64,000 bases of DNA from Phallusia mammillata (lineage: Eukaryota). Each line of letters begins with the position of its first letter. The first letter of the stretch is position 1. This document shows, piece after piece, positions 36,666-64,000 of this stretch. Both the position numbers and the translations under genes were made by a program. The stretch is taken from the NCBI GenBank assembly GCA_965637545.1, contig OZ281500.1:17174001-17238000 (forward strand). The letters are read 5' to 3'. The notes below the pieces were generated by a model. It did not search any database. It was not told the origin of the DNA and saw only the letters and a list, made by a program, of their open reading frames with translations.

Positions 36666-39600
36666 GTTACCATCAAGTACACATAATCACCCGGTTTTGT
36701 CACACACATGCTTGAGCCTTCAGGGCAGGTACGTTGCCTAATTGCTTGCAAGACAACAGTGGGATAGGTTTAGCGCTACGCGACAGGTGCACATGTTGAA
36801 AGTAGACTAAACAAAGGCAAAAAAGATATGCAGAATATTTAAAACGGTCACACACTCCTTACACAGGCTACAGTGGTATACCAATACTCTAATCAAACAT
36901 TGACACAAAAAAACCTTAATATAGCTATCTATCTGGTCCTTACTCTTCAAAGTATAATCTCGAAACCCCAAAAGAGAATTATTTTTACGTACGCAGGTCA
37001 ACAAAAGTTAAAAGGACAATGAACTGAAATAAAATTTTTTAGATCAGTTCTGAGCCTTTCATCCTGACTGAACTTTTTTCTGACACAGTACACAAAAAAG
37101 GGATACAAATTAGTTACCTTTTTCTCTGGTACACACTAAATATGTTTACGTCTTCCAACTTAGCTTTCTGCATCTGTCCCACGCCTCGCCTGTTGGATTT
37201 AAAACATTCGATCTAGCAGCAACACGACTGATTCGCTTTGAAAAAGTTTTTGTGCAAGGGAATTACGGTCTGTACGAGTACCTACTATTAGCGGCAACCC
37301 TAAATACTTGTTTCGGTTTTAATTAGATTTTCAGCTCCTAATTTCGGTGTAATGAGGCAAAACGGGTCAAACTTTAAACGTTTTTGTAAGAACTAATCTC
37401 TAGTTCGCATTTTTACACAATTTACCAAGACATACCTTCGGATTTCGGTCAGGTTTTCTCAAAGAAAATTACATTAAAAAAAATAAACTCGTCAAAATAT
37501 TATGTATGAAATAATAGTGAATTGATATTACCATATACTAATCCACTTCATTTTACGAAAGCGGAGGCCAAGTTGTCATATGTTTATTAAGAATTTATGT
37601 GTTCGATCAGGGGTGGGCCAGACAGAACAAATAAAGCAAAGACATTGTGTCCACATGCTGATTTGCAACCCTTATGAGAGTGATCACTGATGAAAAAGGA
37701 TTGCGCAAGATTGACAAAACGCCAAGCAAAACAAGGCTTTTAGTAGCCCGAATTCCAATGCCATTCATTTCATTCTGTTACGCTATATGTTACTTAAATG
37801 CCCTGATATTGCCCTAGCTTATATTTGTCTCGAGTAAACATCGTGAAGTCGCACGGCACGCTGGGGATTGATTACCCCGCGGTTACTTGTACCCATTCTT
37901 ATTTGCAAAACTGACGAGAGGCACAGGCTGGGCTGGCGAACTGAGTTAAGTCGATCCCGGGCCGCAGTGAAAGTTATAGCTTCGATCGTGGCTCATGTTT
38001 GTCAATGCCAAACTCAAGATCATGCGATCGCGCTTTCGAAGTAAGCCGCATTTGCCACTGATCTACGATCCGTTGATATACGGACGAGGTGTGGTGGAAC
38101 TTTGAAGGATTTGGGATTCGCGCGACTTGGAATAATCAGAAAGCCGCAAAAATGTGAATAGTTCGGTTTACAAACTGAGTGCAAACTTTTATAGATGCGA
38201 TGATACTCCAACGAGGTTTGCTATACATGAGTGGTTTCATTACCTAGCTGAGCGGCTGTATTTATTTCTTTTTCAAAACAACACAAACGGGCTTAGAAAA
38301 ACTTCAGAAGTTTTTTTAAGGAAAAATGTTCTCTTTAACCAAGCGATACGCGGACAAAATGTGCTATAAAAACTTGACTATGGAATGCGCACGCCTTAGA
38401 ATAACTGTCGAGATAGACAATACAAAAGCGCCTTGCACTTGGCCCATAATTTTGCTACAAAGTAATTCAAGAATAGTGGATTCTGTTTGCGCTATGGATC
38501 GCACCTACCCTCGTGGTCAGTATTTTCTATAGCTTGTGACGATGCCGCCTTCAACTCGTTGTCATGCGACAATGGCCCTTCAATCCAACACCAACATACC
38601 TTGTTTGATCACGGCTGCCTTAAATCAACAAAGGATACAACAGAGTGCCACTTTAAACTCAACCATTTCTGGCGACACTCACCTCGACCTAAGGAATCTA
38701 ACACTTCCGCTAAACACATCTCTCGCGGATTTTTCCCTCAAAAGCCCGCTGGTTCCTGCCGCGAAGACAGCCCGTGTCTCTCACATCGCAGCGTTCCGAC
38801 AGTCACAAGCGAACCATCCGCTGTTGACTCTGTTACGCTCATCCCGTCAACGCAAATAGCGAAGAAGGGCCCAGCAACAAAGGCGGGCCGTGTACACACA
38901 CCAGCGCAATGCATTTCCAATATCAATTATCTTAAATCGCAATACGCACGTTTGATAGCAAATCTTAGCGCGATGAACCTCAGTTTACTCTGGCATTCGA
39001 CCAAGATCAACACTGTAACGTTTTCCTATTTGGTCTGCGTCTATAGGTTCTGCCTGGGATTATTTGTGCTTTATATCTTTGAGTGACCTATTTTGATTTC
39101 GCGTCAAGCGAGAGTATAGGAACTCACGCTGGTGTTAGGAAATTGAGAGCTACATTCACTAGACTTCCGATCAAGCTCTGTCCTCCCATTTTCTTTCTTT
39201 ATCGTTGCAGCAGGTGTAGGAATTATTCTGCATCTCTGAACAGTTTTTTTCTTTGCATCAATTATTAAAAGTCCACCTGTTTGGATGTCCGAAACAGGTG
39301 CTATCTGCAACAGGTGCTCTAAACGCGTAGACTGCAACGGACAAAATTCCAAACAATCTGAAAAGTTGATTGTTTTAAAACCTAACTAAAACTTCCGTTT
39401 CGTGAACACGACTTTGATACTAAAAGGAAAGGTTTTTGTTAGTTTATAACCACCTTATAACATACATACACATTTTTCGAAGTTATAAATTTTTCACGTG
39501 TTTCGTGCTTTGCTGAGATAAATGGTTAAACTGGTACACAAATAATCTGACTGAAATCTTGTAAAAGGAACACTTGTCTATAATACAACAACATCAATAA

Positions 39601-43441: not shown

Positions 43442-43805
43442 AAACTAATTCCAATGAGCACGCTGCAAATTGTTCAGTGTTTATTTTGAACAGAAAACCG
43501 CTTATAAAAGCAATTTTCGAACTTGTTTTGGGTAAATAGTTGCTGTTGTTTGTAACAAGTGGCAACGTATTTATATTGAAGTTAAATTATACTGAAAAAT
43601 ATTATATTAAAAGCTCCAGGTTAGACTCTTGCCTCAGAGAAAGCGAATAGTTGTGCTGGAAACAAATAAACATTGTTTAAATTAAGACTATTTGTTTTTG
43701 CAACTTTGCTCTGCAGATGCTTTAAAGTCCTTAATGTGCACTATTTACCATTTTATGTAAAATAAATTGTTTAAAACTAATCTGGAAAACATTCTGCTCA
43801 AAAAT

Positions 43806-46800
43806 ATGACGACCTTACCAGCTATCAAGAGAAAAGGAACGGCAGGATCAAATAAAGACAGAAGTAAGTTTGAATATAGTACCTATTCTGAATGCTGTGT
43901 GTTATTTTTTTACCTATTCTGAATGCTGTGTGGCTAAATGGTGTGGCCACAGTTAAGGCGTACAGAGTGAAACTATGCATTTGTGAGATTTTGCTTATGG
44001 GCTACTGTATAATGCTTGACATCAGTCTTTAACTAGGTTACTGTGATTGTCTGTTAGGGGGCTGTGTCAAACAAATGTCAATAAAAAGGGATACTTTTTA
44101 AATTATGTGCTTGCGAGTTTAGAAAATAAGCATTTACTTTGAATGGTATCATTAATGGTTGCACATTTTCTCTAAAAGTTTCTAAATTGTTTTTGCAGCG
44201 TCTTCACTAAGTACTAAGAATATGAGGTTCATGACATGGAAGGATCGGGAATTATTAAAACAACAGAATATTCGAGATGAAAAGCCGACCATGACTAAAG
44301 TTGAAACAGCAACGTAATGATAAGTTCTTATGAATCTGATCATGTTTACTAAGTGTTCCTATAATGAATTAACAATATATGAATAGCAAACACTGTATTC
44401 TATTTTAGACAAAACCGCTTTTGTTATAAATAATACAAGATTGTTCTATCAGGTATCGAAACTCATACAAACACAACCTGTGCATAGCGATGCTGAAAGA
44501 TGGTTTTCATAAATCATTTGATGAACTGTTTAGTCTCATTGAAATGCGGAAAGCTGAGCGAGAGGAAAGTGGACCAGACTCTGTACTCTGGCAGGTATAA
44601 ACTGGCATGCTACTACAGACAACTGGTTAATTGAATCCTCATTCCACCAAGTACATTATGCAATTGCCAACAATTAGCTGTAGATAAGTTGTATGTTTTA
44701 TATGCAAGGAGGGAATAGCTGTGGCTTTCTGAAAATATGAAGCAATATGGTTAATCGCATGCTGGCGAATATGCAATTATCTGTTTCATTAAACATGGGT
44801 TGGGAATCTAAAGCCTGTTACTTGTGAGCAAAAAAATCTAGTTATTTTTCTTGGTTAATTGCATGAAATAGATTGGCAATATGAATACTGCCTTTGATAA
44901 ACTAGAACCTGCAATAAATATAACACACCATGCAAACTTAAACCTGCAGTACAAAATGCCTTTGTTCAAAATTGCCAATTTTTGTGATGAACAGGAAAGG
45001 TCTCTCGAAGAACAAGAAGAAAAACTAGACCAAATCTGGTTGTACCTAACCAAAGCTGAATCTTCACTTCGTGCAGGTGAACTTGCTATGATATTGATGT
45101 GATAAAAATTCTCTCTTATATACATGTATGTGTATACCATTCAAGACAGGTATGCATCACATCCACTTAGACTGGGTCTCTTGGCTCAAAATTGCCACAA
45201 AAATTTACATCTTTTCATTTATTTACAAATTTCAGTGACAAAGTAAGATACAGTGTCTAGACTGCTGACCAAAGCTGATAAATTTGATGAGTCGCTATGC
45301 ATACAGGATTTTATCACAAGGCGATGAGTCACCCTTTCCCCTAGGAAAGCCGTAATGAGTAATTTTTTATAGGTAAATGGGAAGAGGTGTACATGTGCAG
45401 GCATAAACTGGCCGAGTACTTTCTGGAATCGGAAGACAGATGGCTTTCGGACCATTTCTACAAAACTGCCCTTGAATCAAGCCTCAATATTAGACTGGAT
45501 GGACACAGAAGAGAAGCTGAGGCACGATGTAATATGGGATTGTCGCATGAAAGAAATGGTTAGTCTTAATTAAATGCAGTGGTTTAACCTTTACAATCCA
45601 CATTTTTGTATAAATGGTAACAAAGTTTATGTAAATGCCAGAGTTTAAGAAGCATAAAGTCATTGGTTTACAACAGTTTGACATGTGGATATGCAGAATG
45701 TTATGTTGTTTATGACACTTTATCCTGCATACAGACAATTTGCCAAGGCTAAGTATTGTTTAATTTAACTTGAAAATCTAATGTGATTTTGTACCTGTTT
45801 GTAAAGGAAAAAAGGTATCTTGTGACCTTTACAAATTGCGACAACAAACCGCCCTGTGTCTCAAATTTGACCTCTAAAATGGACCCGATGAAATTCTTGT
45901 GTGCGCATTTGTGCAGTCATGCAAAGAAACACACCGCTGCAATTTAACAAGCCTTGTAATGGTTTTGACTCCATGGCTAGACACTTATTTTGCTACATTG
46001 TCCTTTTGGTCTGCAAATTTTATAGATCCCAAATTGTGTATAAAATCTACAATACATCGTTACAACTTTAGATACACATGTGGGTTTAAAAAGGAACATA
46101 TGGCCCTTTTTGGTGTTGAAATTCCGGTTGTTTAATGAGCCGCTCGCATGATTTAAGCCCTGGCGATTCATTGAGGCGGCGGGCCGCGAGATTGCTCTTT
46201 GAAGTCGGGCAATAGGCTGTGTTTTGGTTTTCCGCGTGGTGCCGACCCACCTTGTGTTGCTAGGGATTAACCGGTCTATCTCGAGTTTAAATATTGACTC
46301 GCTTACCTTTTCCTGTGCCCAAACGGTGTAGCCGATTAGGGGTCCTACTACTCTCTACACAACGCTTTTAGTGGGGTTTCGCCGGTGAAAAAATGCCCTT
46401 TGTTTGCCGGCGTGGCTTGGCAAACCCCCATGTGATTGTTTACTAGGAATTTGCTGAAATCACTTTCGGAAGCAAACTGGTTTCCGACTGATCTATTGTT
46501 GTTGCTAGGTAACCCTTTGCGGACGGTGTTAGAGCGTTTTTTCCACTGATTTATTTTTGTATAATGTAGTTTTAATTGACGCCGGTAAAACAAAAGCGTG
46601 TAATGTTGTGTTTCTTTATGATTCATGCTCTTTTTCAGAAAATGTTTTTCGATAATATAATAAACATATATTTGATCGATAACATAATAACAATAATATG
46701 TGACAAGTCACGGCTTTTGTACAATTTTTAGCATTTTACAGCGAAATTATTACATCGAAATTTGCATTTTACAAATCCCTGCAAATCCTGTGACTGACAA

Positions 46801-49800
46801 TAGATAATATTTCTACCTTTAAATCGAATAACATTACAAATTTTACTTGCACGCGACCAATGTGACATATAAATCCAGCAATGGCTGACAGGAGATGATA
46901 TTTTTAGCTTTAAATCGTACACTATTTCTGATTTTTCATGCACACGAGTAGTATATAAATACTCACCGACGAGACGACAAAATTTTATCAATATATGTGA
47001 TATCAGATTTGAGTCAGCGACTTTAGCTGTCTCCGGCTCAAAACAGACAAGCTATATATTATATGCATCACACCTTCCTTTTGCTGACTGTAAATAAATA
47101 CAACGCGCTTGTAGTTGTCGCAACAAATCAGATGGTGGAGCAAAAGTTTAGGACAAGGTCGCATTAAATGAGTCAATCATGACATGCCTTCCGGGAAAAA
47201 GAAGTCTGCAAGTTATTTAGTATGTTGGAAAAACTAATAGTGTTGTTTCTCAATTCCCAATAACCGGTTCAAGGTTCGGGTAGAATCATCCAAATGCGAC
47301 TAAATCTGAAACGATCGGTGTGGTTGTTGTTTAGGAGAGAAATGTGTTTAGTAATCCGAAAACTCGTTATTGACGCCCCAAAGGGCTTTGCATAAACATA
47401 ACCTACACATCCAACATTTTTGCTTACGAGACTGGTATTTTGTTAAGGCATTATTTTTGATAAAAATAGCTATCTTCTCGTGCGGTAATTCGGCAATAAT
47501 CAAAGTTGTTTTGCATCAAAAACTTCGGTCAAAATTTGTGGTCAATATATGGTTTATATAGGTCGATACTTTGGTTACATCAGGTTTTGATTTTTCCGCT
47601 TCGGAGCAAGCTTGCTATCAAAAGCAAAAAAAATATTGAAATAGTGCTCAAAATCGCACCACAAAAGTGCTTTTTATGGCGGAGTACAACATGTAAACAA
47701 TGAACTTTTCATCATTACCCAAACAACGGCCAAATGAATATGACCATCAGGCTTTCAAACGCAAACACAAATTTGGACACTTCACAAACTAAGCACAAAC
47801 ACCAAATACCCATAACAAAACACAAACAACAATGTTTCCGACTTCATAACAAATCCTTGTAAACCCAAACGCCCCATGACTACAATGTCGACAATTCCTA
47901 TTATGGAAGGTGTGGTTCGCTGTTTGTATCGGTTTCAAAACAAGCGACTGATGTTAACCCATCTTTATCCGGGTCAAGCCTCTATCTGGATACCTGGGGC
48001 ACTTAACTTACCCCGGGGTTTGCGCAAATTCCCCACCCTTACCCCTTTTGTACATACAAGTGTTGCAACTATCGTCTTTTATGTTCAGGCGACTTGAAAG
48101 CGGCCGCCGATGAGATGGAAAAGGCGCATCACTTGAGTTTAGGTCGGATGTGGATGGCTGGCGCGGCCTCGACGCTCCATAAAGTCGTGTGTCGGCATTT
48201 ATCCAGGTGGGTTACGCCTCTGTGCTTGTGGGAGTTTACCGAATGCGAGAATCCTATTTGATTCAGGTTTCCCGTAGTAGGGTTTAATGTGTGGAATATG
48301 CCATCATTTTTGAACCAAGCTTAATATGCTTCTAAAGTGAATAGAAATGAAAACGAAAGTTTGCACGCAAAAGGTTAATTTTTGAGCGAGAGACATTTGA
48401 CTCTTTGGCTTATTTGGGTAAAATCAACATCACTTTTTCATCAGAAGATAAATGCAACTATGCATTGTCGCGAATTCGGTCGGTAAAATGTCATTAAACG
48501 TGCCGTATGTTGTTTGCGAAAAGCAATGCCTTTGCTTAACGTTTCAAATCTTCAATAAAAATATCAGCGAACTCTAGGAATGATTAACGAGACTGGCAAA
48601 TCTTGAAAGGCCAATGAGTTAACGTCGTGGTTTAGTGACCCCTGTTTCAAATCAGGTGAATCCAACAAAAACACAGATTTGCCTTTGAACTTAATTGCGC
48701 GCAATTCCTGAACTTTCGTGCGTTTCAACACAAAATATCGAATCCCACGCGCAACGAAACAACACAAACAAAAACGTTTTCCCAACAAAATCTCGTCGTG
48801 CCTTCCGCCAAACGACCACATTCGAAATTTCAAATGTTGCTAACTGAGGAGAAAAGCCTTTCCGACCTTCGTGACCCACCAAACCCATACAGCTGGGACA
48901 CGTCATCTTCCGGTTGCTTTGTGTTGCGTTAGGTGGGACCACATGTGTGGTGTAGATAAAGTATGGGCGTGCTGGGCACTTTACATGTGTGTGAAAGGGG
49001 ACAACCCTAATTTCAAAGGCGTGTTTGCTCAATGACGAATATGGGGATGGTCTTACGCTGCTCGAAATGGCAAAAACGTTTTACTTTGTCTAAATGTTTT
49101 TGTTTGTTTAGTTTTGTTTCAGTGCAGTTGCGGCCTTAATCACGGTGACATAGTAATTCTATTTTTAACGAGCCATACTATCCGACATTTCTGCGCAACC
49201 CGTGATGGTGAAATAACCTTAGTTACCACATGGCGCCCGTATACCACATGACCCGGACGAATGGGCGTTATTTGCCAGTAACATAACTACATGGCCCCCC
49301 TACATGCATCAGATTTATTTTATTTGTGATATGCTGCGTGTAATTTGTGTAATTTAAAACTTAACTGCGATTTTGTACAATATTTGTTAATCACTCTGTG
49401 AAACATCGCTTAACAAGGTTACTGACTGTCGGTTCTGGGCGATTTTTTCGGGGAGAACAATTTTGTGACCTTATGACAGTTCATCCCAAATGCTTTTTCA
49501 GTGTATCCAACATGTGCAATTTTATTGGCGGATTTTCCCTTGTCTAACAGTCAAAGGCCTTCGGTAACAGCCCACTTATCTTTACATTTGTGCCCTGGAA
49601 CTTTTGTTAGGGCGCAGGATAATATCGAACTACAAACCCTTGGACACTAAAAACACTATATTTTAAGCCATTCGGCATGGCAGCTTATTTCAACATATTA
49701 TTTTGTGGCAGAATGTACACGACCTTGGCCGAGCGCTCATCCACAGTTATCGACGCGCAGAAGCTGTTGCACCGCTCATACGATATGTCAAAAGAGGGGG

Positions 49801-52800
49801 AAGACCCGCTACAAGAGGCAACGGCTGCTTTGAGACTAGGACGAAACTACGAGCTTGCCAAAGACTCGGAAACTGCCATCGAGGTAAACATACAATTTTG
49901 CAAATCAATAGATATTTTTTTATGTTTGGAGGTTTCAGTTTAGACTTAGGGGAATTTGAGTACAGAAAGAGAGATATTCTTTCCATTTCTAAATTTTTGC
50001 GCAGGAAAATGAGGATAAGCGGCGTTCAAACCAAAAAAATGAAAATAGTCCTTCACTACCAAACCGCTTTTTCTATATCTATGTTTTATTAATAGTAAAC
50101 GAACAAAATTAATGATTTTTATTACCAGCAAATGCCTTGTTGGTTGTATTTATAAGTCGAAATAGTAGTACTAATGAAAAATAAGTACGGAAAAGATTGT
50201 TTATTATTTTTTAGGCAAAATTTGCCCTTTGTAGCACACATATTAACCCATATTACGTGGTCACAAATAACTTTTCCCCATGCATTCCAAAAATGCCATT
50301 CAATCATCACAATAGCCAATACTCTTCTCATACAGCGTGTGAACTTGGCTTGCTTCTACTAAACGCCTGTCTATATTTGGCACTGAATTTACGCAAAGGT
50401 CTGACCGCCATACTTAGGGGATGACTGGCGCGTACTAAAGCACTATGTGATGTGGCTTGTACATGATATCTCATGGATAGCAAAGTTACGTTTCTCTTTC
50501 ATGATCGTCACTGATAAACTGTTGCCGCATAAGAAGTGGTGCAAAGATAAACGTCGTTTTTTAGTCAGTTGTGGCTTGCTGACTCACTTTTGATTCGGTT
50601 TTTGGGGCAAGATACTTTGTAACCGTTTGAAGTACATCCGTAAGATAAAGAACCGAGATTTTTAATATAGATTGAAATTGTTGCATGATGCGCCAAAAAA
50701 TGTTTGTAACAAATTTTAAATGATTGCCTCGTAGAAAAAAATACTTTTAAAAGAACGAGTATATGTTTCAAAAGCGAAATTTTGCCTTTAAAATACTTTA
50801 GCACAGTGGCTCCTAACCTTTGTCCACGAATTCAAAAACCCTTAATCAAGATTAAAAAAACACTTTTTCATTTCTCCCCAATAAACTACATAGTAGATGC
50901 CAAACTGTTCAAATATCATTTATTGGGTCTTTTATCAACCTCATTGGGTATATTTTCAGAGATGAAGTGTCCATTTACAAACCACATGTACGAATTTAAG
51001 TAAATTCCTCCCTAGTTGGGAACCACTGCATTAGCATGACAAAATAATTTACATGTAAGATTTTATTTGACAGATTGGATTAGAGTAAAATGGTTTTACA
51101 TGCATGAAAATTACCCAGCAATGCACCCACGCTGTAAAAACCGCCTATCAACCCATTTGGCTCCGTACCAATCTGTGTGCAAACGGAGCAATTACACTAA
51201 ATTATCCTTACGTCAAAGCCTACCAATTACCCCACTTTTTCCCGACTATGCGGATACTTTAGGCTTGCCTATGTACGCAGCGATTAGTTAATAAAGCCCT
51301 CGTCAGAAACTCTTCACTTAATATAGGTCTTCACTTACCTCGCTTGACCGCTGCCCAACTTGACAAGGCAAAGTCCCATCCAAACGAAACGCTTACTCAA
51401 CGTCGCCTAGTTGATGAAGCGTTTTTTTTTTTAATCGACTTGTACTCCCGGGTTGGTTTGTAGTAAATGACGACTTATAGCTTAGTCAGAGTTGCTTTTA
51501 AGATTATGGACAGAAAAGAATATGCCCTGAAAAGTTACGTGTTTAGCGCAACCACATGAGCATCTTAAATGCAACATATTTTGTGAATGAACAGGAAAAT
51601 CTGAGGGACATTGATAACACATTATGTCTATAAACGTATTTTTATGGGTAAACATTGCAAGAAATTTGATCCTGTTCATTTATCGTGCATTTCTGCAGCA
51701 TTGTATCACGGGCATTTACAAAGCACATGATTGCAGAGAGTGGGTTAGGGTTCATTGCAAGGTACAAATAATGCGGTCAAAATGCAGTTTCCATGCAACA
51801 AAATGATCGTGAGGTATATACAATGATCTTGCAAATATAGTTTCATAAAATCTTATATCTGAACCGAAATTTACCTAACTACACAAAAAAAACACGATGC
51901 GCTTGTCAAAAACGAATGGACAATCATCTTAATTTAATCTCAATTTTGTACAGCATTTAGGCCGATGCCTGGAGGGAGCCCAGGACCTTGGAGACAGCGA
52001 GCTTATTGGTGAAGTGTGTGAGGCACTGGCCAAGTCCCACCAGACTCAGGGTAATGTGGGACGATCTATCGAGTGCCTGGAACTCTTCGCCGAAACATCA
52101 CGCACCAATAACCACAAACGAAAACTCGTTGATGCGTGCAATTGCCTCGGAGTTGTTTATAACACGCTGGTACGTATTAGCTTTATATATGTCCTCATAT
52201 TTTTGGGCATACTTAATAATTTGTTCATTAGGATGTGATTTTGAGTAGGGGATGTTGTACAAACGAATGTTTGTTTTAGAAATATTATTGACAAGAACTT
52301 GGAAAGTAGCTTGATCAAAAGCAAAACTGCAGTAAGCTTTTGCAGATAGTGAATGCATTATATTGTAAACGTTCAAAAATCGCCATTGTTATGACCAGTC
52401 TAAAGCGATTTTGGCATGTACAGTGTATCATATTGCTCAAAAATCTATAAAGAGGTTGTATGTTTGATCGAGTGTTCGTGTTTACGACAAATGTGAGATT
52501 CAAAATTGACATGTTGCACGAAATTTAGCACAAAGATTAGATAATGTTTTATAAGAACCTCGGTTCTATTATTTAAAATTGCATTTAAAAGCATCTGAAA
52601 AATTTTCACGTTCTTAGATAACCTTGATGTTATTATACACCGGTGTTGTTTTCGCCGAATTCGGTTTCTAAACTTTCAACCCAACAACAAGTTTGTCAGC
52701 AATTAGTAACGTTTGCATTGACAAAAACAGGTGGGTTCCCACAAAACCGAGTGAGTCATTACTCGTCCGGGGTTTTACCCGAAAAAAAGAATTTTATTCA

Positions 52801-54650
52801 TCAAAAAACAAGTGGGTACGTGGGAATTCCAGGTGACGTCACGTGTTACGTCATTCGATGCACATATTACCGTGACGCAGCAAAACAAACCGTTACACAT
52901 CAAAAAGTGACAATTCATGTTATTCCTATTGCAGTCTAAATCTCAGTCGCAGTGTTGACTCGTAGCGCCAACTAACGACCAAACTCGCCTGACAACGAGT
53001 TTTAATATTATCAAGTATTTGTGCTATTATTTTGGTGCCTAAGAGCACAAGGATTAGCTTGATAAAATGCGGTGAATCGTTTAAAAACATAGAAAGTTTG
53101 GTGACCACACGAATTGTTTTAATTTACTTATAAGTGTTTTACTGCACAAGATCTCTGGCAGATCAGTCAGATTTCCGATCTCTTTGAAGAAAAAAAATAT
53201 AATTGTGCATTCTATTTATGCGAGTTTTAAAGCGCATTTACTGATCGTTGTCGGTCGTTATGGCAGTGTTTCATAATCATTTTAGGTCTGGGAATATTTT
53301 GCCTTAACAAATTTTTTGCGGACTAAAATGTGAATAATGAAACAGTAAATCATATTACGTCACGCGAATTGAATACCGAATCAATTTGATTGAATACGCG
53401 TTACACCGAATCAAGCCAGTCTCCCAAGCATTCCCATATGGTGCCTTGCTTTCAACGGGCCTGGCCTACCATAATTTATCGATATGTATGCCGTGATCGC
53501 TCGTCTGGGTGGACGCTTCAGGGCTGATCCCAGTATGATTGTATGCATCTTAACAGCTAAGAGCTACCACTCAGCTAATAAAACAGTATGTATAGTTAAA
53601 CTTATTTTTGCATCGAAACCTTTTTACGGACTTGGGTTTGGAAACTAAGCAACATACAACCATGTTTTAACACGCATCCCCAAAGTAGCACAAGCGATCT
53701 TTAATTCTTCACAAAAACGCAGGGTCACTACGACAAAGCTGTGAACCACTTTGACTCGGCTTACGGAGTGGCGACGGAGTTACAGCAAGATGTGGAAGAG
53801 TCCGGAGTACAATTGGGAATCGCCAAGGGCAACCAGCTGCTAAATGCATTCAAGCAGAACATGGAGATTCCGTCACGCTTCATGCTTGACCGAATATCGA
53901 TTTGGAAAGACGAACGAGCAAACGAATTTGGGCAACCATTACCAACAAGTAAGAAATTACTTTGTTCAGTTATATTAAACCAGGCCTTCTTATCCTTGGT
54001 GAAACCGTCTACCTTTCGAGGTTATGTATAATTAGGTGGCGAAAGCGCGTTAGTCATGTGACACATTGGCTCAGAGTTGTAAGCGGGCCCGAAATTCGAA
54101 CCCGAACCTGGTCCAAACCCAAATCGTTTTTGAGCAACCCGTTTATCCCCGAGAGATTAACAATTCTTCATTAGGTCACGTCTGTGGTCAAAACGGCTTC
54201 TTGTTGTAAAAAATAGTGCAAAAGTAGCCGCTGGCATTTAAAAGATGAGAAACCCTGGATCCGATGGAAAACAGTTTTGATGGAACAATTGTCCACTTAA
54301 CTAGCATTATGTAAAGTTTCACGAAACACTGAATCCTAACTATTTTCCATGAGTTGATTGCAGTGTACATAAGCTGTCATCAACTTCAACCAACTCTGAA
54401 AGTTACACAAAACACATTAATGTCGTATCACTGAGTTTGCATAGATTCCCAACAAAGCCGCTGTGCGTATTCAACGATTTTAATTCTCCCTACCTCTTTT
54501 TAAGCCTTAAACTACTATTGTCAGGCCCAATACAACGTCTTACGTTATGCTCTAGTTTCTTTTTCAGAGTACGAAACTCCTCCTAAGACTCCGGAGAAAA
54601 TCCCTGATCCCACGGAACCATTCCGGGAGGTAGAAAGGATGCAGACGTGA
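43806..54650 (+). CDS. TTC29: Tetratricopeptide repeat protein 29 (cilia/flagella protein), about 465 aa, 10 exons
   Basis: Exons: 43806-43863, 44199-44313, 44453-44594, 44995-45076, 45373-45558, 48089-48206, 49712-49883, 51954-52169, 53723-53948, 54568-54650 (TGA). All phases join. MTTLP start, [61 protein letters not shown] and ISIWKDER all parallel human TTC29. AATAAA lies near 54965. Confidence 0.92.
50804..51028. mobile_element. 225-bp hAT (Buster-type) MITE in TTC29 intron 7
   Basis: TIRs CAGTGGCTCCTAAC and GTTGGGAACCACTG (two mismatches). The flanks CTTTAGCA and CATTAGCA match at 7 of 8 positions. Confidence 0.8.
52819..52853. promoter_or_regulatory. Dense motif cluster: Su(H)/RBPJ, NF-kB-like, E-boxes and two CRE-type sites
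   Basis: CGTGGGAA 52819-52826, GGGAATTCC 52822-52830, CAGGTG 52830-52835, TGACGTCA 52834-52841, CACGTG 52840-52845, TTACGTCA 52846-52853. Motif match only. Confidence 0.4.
54085..54152 (-). repeat. Possible tRNA-derived SINE fragment
   Basis: The minus strand has a B-box-like GGGTTCGAAT. CCCAAATCGTTTTT(T)GAG is shared with about 30794-30812. It does not fold as a complete tRNA. Confidence 0.3.
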
Positions 54651-57600
54651 CCTCCACGGCCGCATACTCCGTCTTCCTATCTTACTTCGTGTGTTCGGTA
54701 ACTTTGTCATAAAACTGTGAAAAAAAATGTTTATCCGCATGATGTCGCTGTTGAGTAAAATGGTTGGAAACACGCTTTTTCAAATCAGAGTTTTATTTTT
54801 AGGGGTCATAAAAAGTCTTGGAGTAAAAATTGCTAACCACACATCTCACTCCGGTATTGATTTTTATGCTTTATGTTTTTTATTATTGATTTTGTGTTAT
54901 ATTATTTATGTATCTCCTACACGACGTTGTCAATCCAGGTGTAATGCCCCTGAGTTTATCACCTAATAAAAACATACGATGCATATTTTTTTGAATTCAC
55001 AACATTTTACATTAGTACAGCTCAACGCAACGACTACAGAAAATATGTTATAATAACGTCGTTGGTTAGGAAATGCAAATTTGAAACCGTAAAGTTAAGG
55101 ACCAGTGGAATAAAAAAATGCTTCATGCGCTAGATGGCGATGCTGGGCTTTGGGCCATTAAACTTTTCCACGACGTTATTGATTGGTTGGTGGTCGTAGT
55201 GTTATGCACAATTTCGGGTCCCCTATAAAGCTTGCCACACCCTCACGAAAAACACTGTTTGAAAAGCACCTTCAGTTAAAATTACCATGAAAAGCAACGG
55301 TACAAACCCTAATAAAGTGTCAGCCATGTTCAGACATATCTAACTATGCCACAAACCGTTAATAACTGTTATGATAAACACTACATAAGCAATGGTTCTT
55401 ATCAAATGATGTTAGTTTATTGCCAAAATCTGATCAACCACAGTAACGTTGTTACATTGTCATTTACATATTGTTTTCATTTTTACTTGCAAAATTTTAT
55501 ATCATGGTTATGAAACAAAATTTTTGACCCCGCTTCTGGAGTGTTTTTTGAACATCGGCTAAAATGTGAAAATTGTTTACTTAATAGTCAATTACGCTGT
55601 TTATTTTGGTAAAAATTAAACTTTTTCCATTTTCAAAATACAATCGACCTTGTTGCGTCATCAAACACGACATTTGGACAAATTGGTCCAATGATTGGAA
55701 AGCGTCCAGGCAAGTAAAACCAACCCCATTATGGCTTGTACAATTTAAGCCGGCCTGTCGTATAGCGAGAACATGTGGTAAATTCATTGGCAACGCAAGG
55801 TGCAAAGCGGACAATGCCATTCACCTTCCACAAAACGATGAATATTTCATACAACTTTCGTGCGATAGTCGTACGCACCTGTTCCCTGCATCAAAAATTC
55901 ATTGTGCAAAGCGCATGATGCTTACGCGGCCTGAACGAGAAACAGGAGAGAAGATAGATTAAAATTCGTGTTTTCGTCACAGCATAAGCATAAGCAAAAA
56001 ACGAGGTATCATGTTTGGTTTGTGCGGATTCAGGGTCCTGCGTCTCAGGCCTTGTGCATTGCATGTCGATCGATTATCCTCAATTATTAATGACTGGGGG
56101 TGTGTGGCGTCCGCTTTGAATCGTCGATCGCATTCAAGCCCGAGTCGTGGCAAAATACAGAAGGCAACCAGCGTAAACACCCAAGGCCAAGCTCCATGCA
56201 AATACATAGCCTAGCTGGCTGGCGAATCCCCAAGCTGCTGTTAATCACAACTGGAGCTCTCCCGCTACCAGTAACGGCCATTAACGTTTCGAGATGCGAA
56301 ACTCGTTCATCAATTCGCGAGACACGGCGTAGAGAGAAAATTTGCCGGATCGGCCGCTGACTAAGTTTTCTCACTGTTATTTGACCGCAAATTTGCGCAT
56401 GCAATTACGACCACAACCCTGTCTGTAAACCGCATGCGTGTTTCATTTTTTCATCTACTAGTTGCTTATACATGTGCATACACAATACGACATACGTTCA
56501 AAAATTTCAAATTCAGATCAAATTTAGTTATTGTATTTTTTCCATAATACATTCAATTTTTACGATTAGTAGCAATGTAGCCTACTATTTAAACAGCATT
56601 TAGCAGTAACATCTTTCGCTCAAATCATCGTTTTTTAAGAATCTAAATTTGAGTTCGTTTAGGGGTAACGAAGTCGTAAAATTTCATTCTTTTTAGGTCG
56701 TTCTTGCTTAAGCGCGATGAAACCTCGTCTGAAAAATGCTTTCGACTACGAAACTGCTTTTATGTTTGGAATACGATTTGGTCAAATAAAAAAGACAAAA
56801 TCCTGAAAAATATATTTTCTACGCTTTCATACAACGCCTCTAGTTAAACAATAACAACACGTTTGTGTATAACTACGAAAATCCCGATTGATATATCTTC
56901 GTAGATCGAAAGACGCGACGTTGTATGAAGCTCGGCACCCAAAATAGCGATTTAATAGAAAATCCCGGCAAGTGATTTGGCCCTTCACCAGTTTGCCTTC
57001 ATCGCTCACCACTAATTGATCACATTAATCGCAGTCGTGAAACACAAATTGAAGAGACGCAACGAGCATTTAATATTTATTGAAGTTGGTCATGCATTCG
57101 CAATGAAGGTCTGAATATTTTATAAAACATTCGCTTGATAAAATATTGAAAGCACCAGGAAAAAGCCAGTCACATTTTTCTGATCACTTCTGTGTTCGAT
57201 GTTACTTGTGACACCGAGAGAACAATCTAGGATAGCAGATCTGTGAACAAGGTAGACAAGTATCAAGCTCTACACGCGTGAACGAGACGCTTGCATAACG
57301 TGGATTACCTTTTGTGGATTTATGTATCGGAAGTTTTAAGAACAAAGAACTCGGATGTAAAAATACGATGTTGCATAACGAACAAGCCAGCGACAAAGGC
57401 AAACGGAAACTGGATTACCTCAAAACCGGCAACGCATGATCCAGTCGAGGATGGTAAACCACGTGACCTGTACGCGTGCCGTCTGCCACGATGCGCCCCG
57501 GGGGTGCAAACGCGCGACAGACTCCTTGTGTCGGGATGGGCATTTAAATCGGACGTCACCCCCTCATGCTACCGCAGCAACGTGAGTCACGTGTTCAAAG

Positions 57601-60600
57601 GCACCTGTTGATCGCAAAACTGCATGGAAATCTTATGCATCGAGATTTTTTGTGATTGGGTGCAATTTGTGCACTGCGACAACCAATTCAAACTTTGGCA
57701 GCTTGCACGCAATAGCAGCAATAAAGTAAACGCTATAATATGCACAAGAAGCCATACATTTGATTCCCCCACCTAAATGCTCTTTAACATCCAAACACGC
57801 GCAATGTAAAATACAATAGCGAGGAATTGAACCCGTGGTCACAGATTCTGACTAAATAACTTTTTAAAACATTGCAAAAAGTAGCGATTAAAAAAACGAG
57901 TATAACACGTGTTTCAGATAAACCGTACCCGCATAACACCACAATAATATGTCAAAATATATATTACCAAATTGGCCCTTAGATAACTATTTTTGGCACA
58001 GACAGGGAATTCACAAAGAAAATGTATTACGCGGTGAGATAAAAACTCAGGATCATTGGCCTAAAGCGAAAATGGTCGTTTGACATTGTTAAAAGATGCC
58101 TGTGATACACAACTTTCTTCGCTGTAAAAATTACGGCATGGTTAACGTTACCTTCGTAAAAATAGCTGGAAAATGGAACTACACAATATTTTTGATGTAA
58201 AATGAGGGAATGTAATTTACTTCGTCCTGTCCTTTGGTAACAAATCCCAGTTAATATTCGGAGGACGGCACGCGCGCACGTCGTCTCAATTTGATCAATA
58301 AATGTGGAAGAAAACTAACTTTCCGGCCACTCGCTACCCATTGTTCCTTTGTGATTGTGACGAGCGCTGACAACAATGATACGTTTTTTTTACCGATAGA
58401 ACGCGTCAAATTGTTCGCAAAGTTGCCAAAGCGTGAAATAAAGAGACGAAAAAAACGACAAATGAAATTACCAGCAAATTGCTACGACTTCAATGGAATC
58501 AAAATCCGGGTACTAATTCGCCATCAAAAGAACGCGCGTGGGCATTTTGTAATTTTGGGCTTTTGATTGGCGACCTATTGTCAATTGCGTGTTGTTAAAT
58601 ATGATGTTTTCTTCAAACATTTTGGTCAAAAATCGCACCTAATAATGGTAACAAATGTTTTTTTCTGGGCGTTATTACAACAAACTACAAGTGAGATAAC
58701 CGTTGCTGTGTAATAAAATCGAAAAATCCGACTGTTGTAGAATTGTTATGTTTAATTGAAATTTAATTATCGAACGTTTTCGAAAACAAACCTTGTTATG
58801 TTTAATTGAAATTGAATTAGGGCCATTTCCAGGAATGTCATGTCGCCATAAAAAGCCCAAAACACAACTAGAGAATTTTTATGCGGTTACTATTTGGTTG
58901 CGTTATTTTTGGTTATTTTAGAAAATCATCAACTGCAAGTGAATGAAAAAAAATTTTTGCTGTCAAGTTTGGGTAACGAATTTTAACAAACCATCGGCAC
59001 AACTAGAAATGTACGCAACCGGGGATTTCAGGTATACCGGTACATTTGGGTAGTGATGTGAAAGTCATAGGTTGTGACGGTTTTCTATATGCTTATACTC
59101 GGAATTATTTAACCTTGCCGCACTTAACCGGGTACCTGTTTCAAATACAGATATTTATGGAAAATGCTAATATCATCAGACACGCCCGAAGTAGATCACT
59201 AAGAAAAACAATGTTTATTAGCTACAATATACAGGTTCTCGGGTATCAGTTTTCACCACTATCGCCGAATTTAATAAAACGTCTGATTACAATAAAATTA
59301 TTGAAAAGTTATCAACAAAATGCAAGCTTTTTTTACGTGAATACCGCATTTGCAATAATGTATAGATGACAGATTGGCCGGCGCAGTATTGAGGTTAACC
59401 GAAGTTCAATCCACTGTGATTGCGTTAGACAACTGACAAGCCAGAAAGCGCAGAAAAGTGTGCACACTGAGCGAATAAACGGTTGAATGTCAATTCGTGT
59501 TTTATCTTTTCCAGTCGCAATGTGTGCGTCGACCAATAACTAAAATTCCCGACGGGTTGCCTCCTCGGCCTAATGCGCAGCACGCTCTGTAATGGTTCAG
59601 ATCGGTACTAATGTGATGACGCTAATCGATTCTGCGCGACCCAATGACAGATTTTTCGGCTTCAAAAAATGAAGCATATGTTTTCAATGTCAATTTTTTT
59701 TAAACCATAAGATTTTTACCGACCCCATATCTCTTTGAAAGTGTGATTTTCCTAGCAGTTCGAATTAACTTTTGATGCTTGATCAATTTAACGTTGACTT
59801 AACACCTCTAAAAACAAATCATTCATTACTGAAATTTACATAATGGTAATTGATACTGCAATTTTAAAATTCACATCGTTGCTGTTTAAATTCCACACAT
59901 TGGCTTTGCTTTCCAAGATTAAAAGCGAAATTGTGTTTTTGACTGGGCAATAATTTTGAAGTGAGCGCGTTGATATGGTCACGCACTTCGAAGCGTAAGG
60001 CAAGTTCTTTGCGGCCAGCAGGACACCGAATTGCGGCCGGTAGCCTGCTGTTTCCCCGATGTTAGCCGTCGGACGTGCGACAGGAAATAAATTAGTAATG
60101 AGAAGCGAGAAGGTAAACTCCTGAATATTTTATCCTTTGATGAATTATTCAACCAGTGCAAGTGGCGATAATTTGCCTATGTCTGAATATTAATGAACTA
60201 CTTTAGTCAATTGCTGCTTTTAATATTTTATTAGGCCGCCATGGTCGTGTTTCCGATGAGGCTGAGCCTACACCTTCCGTAACAAGCACGGCGTTCGTAC
60301 CGTATTGGTCCCATCCCAACCGAAGTTACATTTTCAAAGTTTGTCACCAAAAACACAATTTTCCGTTTGTTAATTGAGCCATAGTCATGCTTACATAATA
60401 CGTGGTTGCCTATTTTGCTGTAATTATAAGCATATAATGCAGATCTTGAATAAGCGATAAATTGTCTTTAAACCATTCATGTTCTTGTAAATCTCTTGTT
60501 TTTGCAGAACTAATGAAAATTAATACCTTTTTTCAAACATTTGTTATTATTTACAACAGCCCCAGGGCTTGCAGAGAAAATATGCATTAATATACACCGC

Positions 60601-61843
60601 TTACTTTAAAACTAATTCGTGTAAAATTAAAGATTTACCTTTCAAACATGAAATAGCATTTGTGTATGCAGGTTCGACCACAAAACGCGTGCCAGCAAAG
60701 TGTTTGAATCCAAAGACCACCTGCTGGTAAAATAGCCCAAGGCAAATGTGGCAAATCAAGAAATGGCGTCTGGCATGGGCACGGCATGTAATGGACGCCC
60801 TTCGCATATCTACCTGAAGAGGCAATCACCAGGGACACAAGCAGTCATCTAACAATTGTCAAGCATCTGTCATGTATCAGTCACTCTGCTTTCTAAAACT
60901 TGGTTTAATCCGAGTCGAATGTGTTCAATTCGATCAAATCACAAAGCGAGTGTATGCGAAACAAAACAATTGCCGTTTGTTGATTGTTTATTTACACATA
61001 ATCACTGTCGAATTTATCTCTTATTGTTTGTTTTCTGCAAAGGAACCATGCATTTTATTAAACTAACATTAAATGTTGAAAATATGTCTAATTAAAATGT
61101 TACCCGACCAAATACTAAAATATCAACAACAAAAGCTAATCGTTTAATTGAGACCAAAAACAATTGCTGAGCTGAATCCAAGTGTTCCAAAAAAATCTGC
61201 CTACAATATAACACATTCTGAAACTACAAATATATTAAGTCGACTTGTATTTTTCCAAGCAATGTATTGCAACGTGCGACGATAGAGGAACTCAAAAATA
61301 AAACGAAACAAACTGAAAAGCGTGAAAAACAAAACAGAAACTTTGAAGCCTCTAGAATCCCGAGCAGCAAGGTGCATTTACATCCCATGCGTTTAGGAAA
61401 GCTTGAAGAATAACAACAATATGGGGAGTAAAATGTTCACAGGGCAATACTTCGTCACAAAGCAGACTAAATGAGGTGCAAAGCTGTTGTGACCAGCAGC
61501 TATTTGTGAGATTGCACCAATTTTTGAAGTCACAGAGATATCCAATAGTTTGATCACAGTTGACAGCTTATCGACTGGCAATGAGCAGCGAAGTATTGTA
61601 CAAAGAGTACATGTGATTTCGTTTTGATGCACAGTGCACACTGCAGAGATGGTGATCGACAAATTAAAGCATTGCTTCCTGCGAAATAAAACAAGTATAT
61701 TAGATTATTGACCTTGTCTAGTTCAGAATGACCCTTGCTCATTTGATGCTTGTAGCTCAGTTAAAAACTATCTTTGTTACAAAATACAATAAACGTTGCT
61801 TAAAATCACTTCAAACAACAAACATTGATATAAAATGTCAATT

Positions 61844-63526
61844 TCATTGTTTAACTATTATATAGGTTCTTACCGCATTAAAAGCTGAAAATTTCATTCT
61901 TTTTTGTTTTTGCCTTTGATTGCAAAACCAAACTCTCACAACGTTTTTCTTGAGGTCAAGCTTTTCAGCAATGGCTGCTATTTTCTCGGATGAAGGCCGT
62001 GGCTGCAAAAATTAAATACAATTTTATTGATTTTACACAAGCCATTATCTTGTTTACAGTTGGTCAGAATATTTTTAGATGTAAATTTTTACCTGAACTG
62101 CAAAGTAGGCTTCGAGGGACCGTTTTTCTGGAGCAGCAATTGAAGTTCTTTTCCTCTTTTTGTCTCCTAGTCCTGCACTTTCCATCTTTCTTCTATGTTC
62201 CTCTTCAGCCTTTTCCAACCAGGCGATAAGGATTGGCTTAAGAGCCACCATGTTGTTGTGACTAAGGGTGAGCGATTCAAACCTAAAAAAGAAAGTTTGT
62301 TGAAACTTAAATAAGCTTTTAAACATTAATTTAAAAACAGAATTTCATTGTTGTAAACTTGATACCACCAACAAACGATCTATAGATCGTTATAATTATT
62401 TCTTTTTAATAATTATAATTATTTCTTTTTTATTAAAATATTTGGTAGTTTTTAGTTTAGCAGTTTGTGTTTGGAAAACTAGACATTATCTTACCTGCAA
62501 ATTGTGCTTTGACTTAAGGAGCCAACTCCAGGTAACTTAAGGTTGGCAAGTGCTCTGCCCACGTCGTTTTGTGTAACTCCAAGCTTAATACGTCGTTGCT
62601 TGAATCTATTTGAACACATAACAATCGAGGTTTAGTTTGTGCCTTTTACCAAGTTTAAACTTTCTCGTCAATATTAACACCGACCTTTCAGCAAATGCTT
62701 CCAATTCTCGTGGGTCTGCGTCGTACTCACTGGCGGGGAAGTTTGCCACGATTGTGTTAGGAGACGCTACAGACAGAAAACAAAGGTTTAAAATTCAAGC
62801 AAATCTTGCCGCTTTTTCAGACCAACTAACATTTCTTGTATTAGACCAAGGTAACTTTCACACAACCTGAGAACAAAACACAAGATAATTTTGAGGTTCT
62901 TACCTGGCTGTGTTGTTGTTGCCGTCGTACTGGATGGTGGGGGTATGGAGGGGTGAATCGATGACGACACTGGGTGAAAGTGGCTGGTGGGGTTGTATGG
63001 GGGCGCAGTGTGGCTGATGTAGTGCGGTTGTGACACTGGGTCGGCGGATGACATCATTACTGATGACGTGTTAAAGGTGGGATGCTGGTATGTGGGAAAT
63101 GCCCTAAAACAAAAGTTGAGCGTTAAGAAACATGAAAGTTAGAGTTTTTTTTAAATGTGCGGATTTAAAAAATTACCCGTGAGAGGAGCCCAGCTGATCG
63201 ATGACGTCATTTGTTTCGAGGGTGGATTGTAGAGCGGCTGTGTGGTGAAAAGCTGACGGCGGATGCATTGAACTGTACACTGCGAAAGTTGAAACGGTCA
63301 AATATACGTTCGTCTGTTGCTAACCAACCGATCAGGTTGCCAAGTTACCTGGCGGTGGCATAGCTGGGGCTGTATGCTGCTGCGTAACATAATGTGTAGC
63401 TGATGGGGCATAATATGAGTGGTTTGTCGGTTCCGGTTTAAACTGGTTCTTTCCGGTGTAATCCACAGCGGCCAGAGCCTCCGCTCGCGCGAGAAAAGAT
63501 TCGTCGAAACCAGCGAATAAGTTGCC
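61844..63526 (-). CDS. POU4: POU class 4 homeobox transcription factor (Brn3), 5'-partial, 7 exons in window
   Basis: Exons (minus strand): 63349-63526 (POU-IV box [22 protein letters not shown]), 63177-63279, 62904-63103, 62685-62766 ([13 protein letters not shown]), 62495-62605 ([25 protein letters not shown]), 62093-62282 ([39 protein letters not shown]), 61844-62002 ([35 protein letters not shown]). These motifs are diagnostic of class 4. The first exon lies beyond the window and the exact C-terminus is uncertain. Confidence 0.96.
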
Positions 63527-64000
63527 CTGAAAAAGTCAATGTTTTGTAAGTTTAATAAATCCCATCATCCGAAGCATATGTTTCCGATTCGCTACCCGTG
63601 CGACTTTGGTGTTTACAATGGGATTTGACCCCGATTAAAAAGCGATGGGGGGCTTATGAGAGAGAAGAGTATGGTGTGAGCCGCGACGCCATTTTGTCAG
63701 TCGTGAAATTTGCAGATGTCGGCGAAAAATTTACGGCCACGCTTCACAGTATTGCGTAATTACGATGTGAGTGCATCGCGACGCAGCACGCAAACCATTT
63801 ATCTGTGACGGTTTTCGACACATAAAAACTGATTGATCATCTGTCAGTTTTCAAAAACTCAATTTTTGCATAAGTGTAAAAAAAGACTAAAAATAAAATT
63901 TTGTTTTTTGTTACTGTATTAACCATTCTTTATGAAAACACAAAATCAGCGCAAAACATACTTAATTTTATGACAGGTGACAACAAGAATTAAATAAAAA

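What the first reader, a model, noticed from the sequence alone, without database searches (positions are those of the whole stretch)
43806..63526. TTC29-POU4 tail-to-tail linkage matches human TTC29-POU4F2
Seen: TTC29 (+) and POU4 (-) are adjacent and convergent. TTC29 introns lengthen from about 0.1-0.4 kb to 1.5-2.5 kb toward POU4 and are CpG- and motif-rich, as is the 7-kb gap between the genes. Known from memory: human POU4F2 and TTC29 are convergent neighbours on 4q31, and TMEM144 is on 4q32. Tunicates have lost most microsynteny, and retained pairs often reflect enhancers of a developmental gene inside a bystander gene. Inference: an ancient genomic regulatory block for sensory-neuron POU4 expression.
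Basis: partly seen in the sequence, partly recalled or inferred. Interest (0 to 1): 0.75.

Follow-up and report, generated by a model that had tools for sequence, protein, structure and literature searches.

The report
Conserved TTC29–POU4 tail-to-tail gene pair
In this sea squirt the sensory-neuron regulator POU4 and the cilia gene TTC29 lie tail to tail as they do in mouse and human, three other sea-squirt genomes keep the arrangement, and the conserved non-coding DNA lies between the two genes, not in the long TTC29 introns.

Summary
TTC29 (+, 10 coding exons, 43806-54647) and a class IV POU gene (-, about 63535 down to 61231) are convergent neighbours about 7 kb apart. TTC29 introns grow from 0.13-0.40 kb to 1.5-2.5 kb. 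CpG density rises about fivefold from about 46.0 kb onward.

The linkage is not chance. Three other diverged tunicate-like genomes have TTC29 convergent with POU4, 11-13 kb apart. Published mouse and medaka work places Pou4f2 enhancers within and beyond Ttc29.

The proposed mechanism is only partly supported. Five colinear conserved non-coding elements (CNEs) lie in the intergenic gap at 60.1, 59.6, 57.5, 57.1 and 55.9 kb. None was found in TTC29 introns. Long introns are not shared: in one species exons 8-10 are fused. Tested motifs are not enriched.

RNA contigs show two new features. One is a spliced, probably non-coding + strand transcript in the gap that starts beside the best-conserved CNEs. 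The other is an extra 3' intron in POU4.

In amphioxus no POU4 lies within 10 kb of TTC29, so ancestry beyond tunicates plus vertebrates is unproven.

Verdict: a new member of a known kind (a genomic regulatory block or conserved microsyntenic pair), of moderate interest.

The parts
43806..54647 (+). TTC29 coding region, 10 exons (boundaries approximate, taken from tblastn): 43806-43865, 44201-44314, 44445-44594, 44992-45099, 45372-45560, 48085-48222, 49674-49883, 51948-52169, 53717-53947, 54564-54647
   Evidence: tblastn of P0001. phmmer hits to TTC29 chains 9fqr, 9d2f and 8j07, colinear at residues 106-134, 143-196, 249-303, 318-366 and 376-442.
45561..53716 (+). Long TTC29 introns 5-8 (2.5, 1.45, 2.06 and 1.55 kb). 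They are CpG-normal and unique sequence. No cross-species conserved element was detected.
43501..46000 (.). CpG-depleted patch (o/e 0.25-0.68) covering the compact 5' part of TTC29. A sharp boundary lies near 46.0 kb inside intron 5.
61231..63535 (-). POU4 (class IV POU homeobox) gene. Approximate exons: 63413-63535, 63131-63286, 62911-63039, 62684-62779, 62476-62607, 62084-62287, 61873-62008, and a last exon 61231-61677 (four codons plus 3' UTR). The ATG was not located.
   Evidence: Pfam Pou and Homeodomain. Class 4 POU best hits. tblastx exon blocks against three tunicate loci. RNA contigs with a splice 61873|61677 that end at 61231-61244 in runs X1, X2 and X7. C-terminus read. POU-IV-box-like peptide.
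60083..60236 (.). CNE1, about 150 bp, 71-75% identical to species A and C by BLAST. 79 of 176 alignment columns are invariant in four species. It abuts the acceptor of exon 2 of the gap transcript.
   Evidence: (nhmmer E 2e-23).
59589..59646 (.). CNE2 (probable). Invariant ATCGAT-containing block, in colinear position.
   Evidence: A/B/C; nhmmer E 0.0016.
57458..57520 (.). CNE3. Invariant GC-rich block with ACGCGT and CACGTG. It lies inside exon 1 of the gap transcript.
   Evidence: (E 2e-7).
57063..57157 (.). CNE4, about 90 bp, 76-79% identical to A, B and C, as high as the POU-domain exons. 58 of 109 columns are invariant. It ends about 60 bp before the 5'-most base of the gap transcript contig.
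   Evidence: (E 1e-17). No RNA covariation. No Rfam match.
55838..55906 (.). CNE5 (probable, weak), colinear, about 1.2 kb from the TTC29 stop.
   Evidence: A/B/C; E 0.013.
57218..60913 (+). Spliced transcript in the gap, on the TTC29 strand. Exons 57218-57581, 60235-60338 and 60672-60913, with GT..AG introns. The longest ATG ORF is 56 aa, so it is probably non-coding. Its ends are not defined.
   Evidence: read laying joints in runs X1 and X2. Splice-site and ORF check.

Best explanation
TTC29 and POU4 are a retained ancestral tail-to-tail pair, dating at least to the common ancestor of tunicates and vertebrates. In tunicates the interval between the two 3' ends holds a colinear array of at least three firm and two probable conserved non-coding elements. 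These most likely are 3' cis-regulatory elements of POU4: enhancers, and possibly the promoter of an associated non-coding transcript. TTC29 marks the far edge of this landscape. Rearrangements that would separate POU4 from its 3' elements are selected against, which keeps TTC29 next door. In vertebrates the same landscape has expanded into and beyond TTC29. Shown: gene identities, orientation, linkage in four tunicate genomes, the CNE array, and the transcript. Inferred: that the CNEs regulate POU4, and that this constraint explains the retention. The long, CpG-normal TTC29 introns of this species may hold lineage-specific elements, but nothing found here says so.
For: Gene identities. Convergent linkage in three further tunicate-like contigs, with 11.35, 11.9 and 13.4 kb from the end of the POU4 homeodomain exon (the extra 3' intron was not modelled there) to the TTC29 3' exons. 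Five colinear CNEs in the same order and orientation in all loci; identity equals or exceeds that of coding exons, while the rest of the gap does not align. The CNE cluster is POU4-proximal in A-C: CNE1 lies 1.6-3.7 kb from the last homeodomain exon, and 2.7-6.5 kb of unconserved sequence lies before TTC29. More CNEs lie 5' of POU4. Mouse: 11 putative Pou4f2 enhancers over about 350 kb, many within or beyond Ttc29, track Pou4f2 and not Ttc29 expression. Atoh7 CUT&RUN peaks lie in the Ttc29 terminal intron. A medaka ttc29 exon remnant acts as a retina/tectum enhancer overlapping pou4f2 expression. Pairs of a developmental gene with a non-developmental gene make up 54.6% of conserved pairs in tunicates.
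Against: No CNE was detected inside or beyond TTC29, so a break between CNE5 and TTC29 would spare every conserved element found. In species A-C that leaves 2.7-6.5 kb of apparently free sequence, yet the pair persists. So either undetected elements exist or retention is partly neutral. No enhancer assay, ATAC or Hi-C data were available. Candidate motifs are not enriched. Amphioxus shows no POU4 within 10 kb of TTC29, and a different gene lies 2.2 kb downstream. Species A-C are unidentified, so the phylogenetic breadth is inferred only from sequence divergence.
Confidence: 0.6

Rival explanations
1. Neutral retention. The two genes are simply close (7-13 kb), so few breakpoints have fallen between them. 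The CNEs regulate POU4 but play no part in keeping TTC29 adjacent.
For: All detected CNEs are intergenic. 2.7-6.5 kb next to TTC29 is unconserved in A-C. TTC29 intron lengths are lineage-specific. Amphioxus lacks close adjacency.
Against: The same pair in the same orientation persists in four strongly diverged tunicate genomes (TTC29 exons only 28-56% identical) and in vertebrates. These are lineages with little conserved gene order: 197 conserved pairs in Ciona against 842 in amphioxus.
Confidence: 0.22
2. The conserved elements belong to an independent conserved non-coding RNA gene in the gap, as its promoter (CNE4, CNE3) and splice signals (CNE1). That RNA gene, not POU4 enhancers, is what is conserved between TTC29 and POU4.
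For: A spliced + strand transcript starts about 60 bp from CNE4 and contains CNE3. Its exon 2 acceptor AG falls on invariant columns at the edge of CNE1.
Against: Exon sequence outside CNE3 is not conserved. There is no RNA structural covariation and no Rfam family. The transcript is known from two runs of one study only, and nothing is known of it in species A-C. Transcripts from active enhancers are common, so this is compatible with the main explanation.
Confidence: 0.1
3. Co-regulated pair. Shared elements in the gap drive both genes in ciliated sensory cells, POU4 as determinant and TTC29 as axonemal component.
For: CNE5 of species A-C contains an RFX X-box-like palindrome (GTTNCCATGGCAAC type). 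TTC29 is an axonemal protein by its solved-structure relatives. POU4-dependent Ciona sensory neurons are ciliated (general knowledge).
Against: The X-box is absent from the window's CNE5 and gap. In mouse retina Ttc29 is barely expressed and does not follow Pou4f2. Conserved co-regulated pairs are typically head-to-head, not tail-to-tail.
Confidence: 0.08

Closest known systems
Vertebrate Pou4f2-Ttc29 locus (mouse, human, medaka)
   Same: Same two orthologous genes. Ttc29 lies on the 3' side of Pou4f2, with its terminal intron nearest to it. Regulatory DNA for the POU4 gene lies on that 3' side.
   Different: In mouse the putative enhancers spread over about 350 kb, within and beyond Ttc29. 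Here the whole interval is about 7 kb, and the conserved elements found are all intergenic. No sequence homology between tunicate CNEs and vertebrate enhancers was tested.
Genomic regulatory blocks and conserved ancestral microsyntenic pairs (Irimia et al. 2012, PMC3514665; Kikuta/Engstrom model)
   Same: A developmental transcription factor is kept next to an unrelated non-developmental gene, with conserved non-coding elements and a bystander gene with long introns in this species.
   Different: The defining feature that elements lie inside or beyond the bystander was tested and not met at this evolutionary depth. Conservation is shown in only two major lineages here (tunicates, and vertebrates by literature). 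Whether the pair is in the published list could not be checked because the supplement is not held.
Positionally conserved lncRNAs next to developmental transcription factor genes
   Same: A spliced, apparently non-coding transcript arises beside the best-conserved non-coding elements near a developmental regulator.
   Different: Conservation of the transcript itself in other species is not shown. It rests on contigs from one study.

Membership tests
POU class IV (Brn-3/POU4/Unc-86/Acj6) | POU-specific domain followed by POU homeodomain | tested here: met
   Pfam PF00157 on two exons and PF00046 on the last homeodomain exon.
POU class IV (Brn-3/POU4/Unc-86/Acj6) | Closest relatives are class IV, and an N-terminal POU-IV box is present | tested here: met
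   All named top hits are class 4 POU, Brn-3 or Acj6. The exon 1 translation carries a [16 protein letters not shown]-type motif; calling it a POU-IV box rests on my own knowledge.
TTC29 | Colinear similarity along the protein to TTC29, not to other TPR proteins | tested here: met
   Five exons match TTC29 chains of axoneme structures in order. GPSM2 and other TPR hits are weaker and confined to one exon. Full-length near-identical protein P0001. Amphioxus orthologue.
Genomic regulatory block (GRB) | Target is a developmental regulator and the neighbour is functionally unrelated | tested here: met
   POU4 against axonemal TTC29. The role of Ciona POU IV as sensory determinant comes from PMC8794889.
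Genomic regulatory block (GRB) | Linkage conserved across distant lineages | tested here: met
   Window plus three other tunicate-like genomes. Mouse, human and medaka by literature. Amphioxus: not within 10 kb, inconclusive.
Genomic regulatory block (GRB) | Array of conserved non-coding elements around the target | tested here: met
   Five colinear CNEs 3' of POU4 and further ones 5' in other species.
Genomic regulatory block (GRB) | Conserved elements lie within or beyond the bystander gene, so that a break would separate them from the target | tested here: not met
   No BLAST or nhmmer hit in TTC29 introns. In species B exons 8-10 are fused, and C has 0.5-0.6 kb introns. Sequence beyond TTC29 in the other species was not available.
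Genomic regulatory block (GRB) | Elements act on the target and not on the bystander | not testable with these tools
   Needs reporters, deletions or contact maps.
Conserved ancestral microsyntenic pair (CAMP, Irimia 2012) | [quoted passage not shown] | tested here: inconclusive
   Two lineages shown. Amphioxus was seen only within +/-10 kb. The published list is not held.

The most novel reading that the evidence does not exclude
The 3' CNE array, especially CNE4 and CNE3 with the transcript that starts there, is the tunicate counterpart of the Atoh7/Pou4f2-bound enhancers now found in and beyond the last intron of vertebrate Ttc29. That would make it a sensory-neuron enhancer module (with an associated lncRNA) dating to the tunicate-vertebrate ancestor, and the reason why TTC29 has stayed tail to tail with POU4 for over 500 million years.
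Probability: 0.15. Interest if true: 0.7.

Novelty: new member of a known kind. Interest (0 to 1): 0.45.

Why it matters
Tunicates have scrambled most gene order, so a pair kept in the same orientation as in vertebrates points to a functional constraint. Non-coding conservation across diverged ascidians is uncommon. The five small elements within a 4.5-kb span (55.8-60.2 kb) therefore give a short, directly testable list of candidate POU4 enhancers for the cells that make chordate mechanosensory neurons. If they work as proposed, the locus would link the compact tunicate arrangement to the 350-kb mouse Pou4f2 landscape. It would also show how a regulatory landscape can spread into a neighbouring gene.

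Tried and rejected
1. P0003/L005, a 3836-aa protein, was a false positive caused by a repetitive protein.
2. Full-length TTC29 relatives P0002 and P0004 came from transcript contigs without genomic context. P0001 is not on record.
4. The word search with TTC29 exon 5 found no candidates.
5. L014, a fifth tunicate-like contig, covers mostly the POU4 5' flank and says nothing on linkage.
6. Hidden genes or transposons in the introns and gap: no Pfam hits in eight ORFs of 89-118 aa, no repeats within the window, and no tandem repeats.
7. A non-coding RNA reading of CNE4 was rejected: no covariation and no Rfam match in 43-64 kb.
8. Motif ideas: a MORE-like palindrome ATGAATATTCAT is not enriched. 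There is no RFX X-box in the window's gap. POU IV 6-mers, E-boxes and Fox sites occur at chance level. Only a recurrent invariant AATATT core inside CNE1, 4 and 5 remains as an unexplained observation.
9. CpG profiles of species A-C give no clear methylation boundary, so the CpG step inside TTC29 intron 5 cannot be tied to POU4.
10. The supplements of the two microsynteny papers are not held. No published Ciona Pou4 cis-regulatory dissection was found.
Exons were searched one by one. Joining was done only inside a local script, to read the POU4 C-terminus and the ORFs of the gap transcript.
12. No human sequence was fetched or compared.
Full report
**Observation**

A 465-aa protein from the representative search (P0001, 83-100% identical per exon) maps to ten + strand exons between 43806 and 54647. 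Five of these exons, searched one by one against the sequences of solved structures, hit only chains named tetratricopeptide repeat protein 29. The hits are colinear, at residues 106-134, 143-196, 249-303, 318-366 and 376-442. Other TPR proteins hit only weakly and on one exon.

The introns measure about 335, 130, 397, 272, 2524, 1450, 2064, 1547 and 616 bp.

On the - strand, exons between 63535 and 61873 carry the Pou and Homeodomain Pfam domains. Their best database matches are all class 4 POU proteins. The first conserved exon encodes a POU-IV-box-like motif (the name of the motif is from my own knowledge). The genes are convergent.

**Transcript evidence**

Contigs of four public runs from three studies of the same organism were laid on 56001-62000.

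- All four runs show a splice 61873|61677 (GT..AG on the - strand), and contigs of three runs (X1, X2, X7) end at 61231-61244. POU4 therefore has one more intron than the ORF suggests.
- Its reading frame ends four codons into a last exon at 61231-61677.
- The distance from the TTC29 stop is about 7.0 kb to the POU4 stop and about 6.6 kb to the POU4 mRNA end.
- Two runs of one study also show a + strand spliced transcript inside the gap, with exons 57218-57581, 60235-60338 and 60672-60913.
- That transcript has canonical GT..AG introns. Its longest ATG ORF is 56 aa, so it is probably non-coding.
- The runs are labelled 'RNA?' by guess, but the spliced joints show that they are RNA.

**Linkage in other genomes**

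The middle POU4 exon found exon-sized ORFs on long contigs of three ENA assemblies. Fetching these and walking one step further gave three loci:

- A: ERZ22157276 ctg13321l (L007+L013).
- B: ERZ21736675 ctg13799l (L008+L011).
- C: ERZ25067590 ctg30237 (L009+L012).

All three share the POU4 exon structure. In all three, TTC29 lies downstream of POU4 on the opposite strand, at 11.35, 11.9 and 13.4 kb (measured from the end of the POU4 homeodomain exon; the extra 3' intron was not modelled there).

They are distinct and diverged:

- POU-domain exons are 71-81% identical at the DNA level.
- TTC29 exons are only 28-56% identical at the protein level, about as far from the window as amphioxus TTC29 is.
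- I take them for tunicates because of the shared POU4 intron positions and the alignable non-coding DNA.

In Branchiostoma lanceolatum (GCA_035083965.1, identified) TTC29 is a 5-kb gene. It has no POU4 within 10 kb on either side, and a different gene lies 2.2 kb downstream. This is inconclusive for looser linkage.

For vertebrates I used only papers:

- In mouse, many of eleven putative Pou4f2 enhancers, spread over about 350 kb, lie within or beyond Ttc29 on the 3' side of Pou4f2. They follow Pou4f2 expression, not Ttc29 expression.
- Atoh7 binds two sites in the terminal intron of Ttc29.
- In medaka, a remnant of a lost ttc29 exon is an enhancer with pou4f2-like activity.

**Conserved non-coding elements**

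Comparing the four loci gives five blocks in the same order and orientation, all between POU4 and TTC29.

| Element | Window position | nhmmer E-value (profile from A-C) |
|---|---|---|
| CNE1 | 60083-60236 | 2e-23 |
| CNE2 | 59589-59646 | 0.0016 |
| CNE3 | 57458-57520 | 2e-7 |
| CNE4 | 57063-57151 | 1e-17 |
| CNE5 | 55838-55906 | 0.013 |

- CNE4 is 76-79% identical to A-C, as conserved as the POU-domain exons. The surrounding DNA does not align at all.
- The invariant blocks are AT-rich with a recurrent AATATT core (CNE1, 4, 5). They include an ATCGAT block (CNE2) and ACGCGT plus CACGTG (CNE3).
- CNE4 shows no RNA covariation and no Rfam match.
- CNE4 ends about 60 bp before the first base of the gap transcript contig. 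CNE3 lies in its first exon. The acceptor AG of its second exon sits on invariant columns at the edge of CNE1.
- In A-C the array sits on the POU4 side of the gap. It leaves 2.7-6.5 kb of unconserved sequence before TTC29.
- Further conserved blocks lie 5' of POU4 in A, B, C and a fifth contig, L014. These fall outside the window.

**The intron, CpG and motif claims**

- No conserved element was found in any TTC29 intron.
- Long 3' introns are not a shared feature. Species B has exons 8-10 fused, C has introns of 0.5-0.6 kb, and A has one of 4.8 kb.
- The introns and the gap are unique sequence without Pfam-bearing ORFs, repeats or tandem repeats.
- CpG density is about 0.8 per 100 bp in the short introns, 3.6 in the long ones and 4.6 in the gap. 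There is a sharp step near 46.0 kb.
- CpG o/e near 1 is the default for most of 20-64 kb of the window. The unusual part is therefore the small depleted patch over the 5' end of TTC29.
- Species A-C give no matching boundary. I cannot tie the CpG step to POU4.
- Candidate motifs occur at chance frequency.

**Mechanism**

The best-supported reading has two parts. First, the tail-to-tail pair is ancestral to tunicates plus vertebrates. Second, the interval 3' of POU4 is POU4's regulatory territory. Confidence in the ancestry part is about 0.9. Confidence that the constraint from this territory explains the retention is about 0.5-0.6.

The specific idea that TTC29 introns 5-9 of this species carry POU4 enhancers is possible but has no support here (about 0.25). 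Rival readings are neutral retention of a tight pair, an independent conserved non-coding RNA gene, and co-regulation in ciliated cells. The last is suggested by an RFX X-box-like palindrome in CNE5 of A-C, which is absent from the window.

**Comparison and novelty**

The kind is known: genomic regulatory blocks and conserved microsyntenic pairs. Pairs of a developmental gene with a non-developmental gene make up 54.6% of conserved pairs in tunicates, and bystander genes have longer introns. The vertebrate Pou4f2-Ttc29 regulatory relation is published.

I found no paper describing the tunicate linkage, the CNE array or the gap transcript. The pair may be in an unavailable supplementary list. 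The GRB criterion that conserved elements lie within or beyond the bystander was tested and not met. I therefore call it GRB-like and a new member of a known kind.

**Limits**

- There is no outgroup beyond one amphioxus locus.
- No functional or chromatin data were available.
- Species A-C are unnamed.
- Exon boundaries are approximate.

Noticed in passing
window 57218-60913 (+): Spliced, probably non-coding transcript between TTC29 and POU4. It starts beside CNE4, contains CNE3, and its exon 2 acceptor abuts CNE1. Small unspliced contigs also cover 57603-57794, 59387-59660 (over CNE2), 59963-60115 and 60988-61171.
   Followed up: partly
window 61231-61873 (-): POU4 has an extra 3' intron (about 61678-61872). 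The open frame does not stop at 61844 as the ORF suggests. It is spliced to a last exon with four more codons and about 430 nt of 3' UTR.
   Followed up: yes
L007:4169-4254, L008:4995-5082, L009:3269-3355, L014:4867-4937: An 87-bp element about 3 kb upstream of the first POU4 coding exon. It is 88-98% identical among three tunicate-like genomes and about 80% identical in a fourth. The window ends before the corresponding place.
   Followed up: no
L007+L013 (A 20213-20436 in merged coordinates), L008:15761-16015, L009:18214-18443: CNE5 of species A-C carries an RFX X-box-like palindrome (GTTNCCATGGCAAC type) and a CAGGTG E-box. The X-box is missing in the window.
   Followed up: partly
window 43501-46000: Small CpG-depleted patch (o/e 0.25-0.68) over the compact 5' exons of TTC29, inside an otherwise CpG-normal 20-64 kb region. 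It suggests germline methylation of only the 5' quarter of the gene.
   Followed up: partly
window 32000-42000: GC-rich (0.41-0.52), CpG-normal 10-kb stretch upstream of TTC29 without long credible ORFs. It may be another regulatory or small-exon region.
   Followed up: no
window 1395-4585 (+): Coiled-coil ORF and an exon with a kinesin-neck-like NELVELRG motif. This is possibly a C-terminal-motor kinesin gene, judged by my own reading of the translation only.
   Followed up: no
L010 vs L009: Two contigs of assembly ERZ25067590 carry the same POU4 exon product. Their last-exon offsets differ by about 100 bp, so they are probably haplotigs.
   Followed up: no
L005 (GCA_040954505.1 CM082423.1): A 93-kb gene model of 3836 aa built from about 1.16-kb tandem exon repeats scored as a TTC29 hit without any aligned stretch. 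It is a false positive of the representative search.
   Followed up: yes
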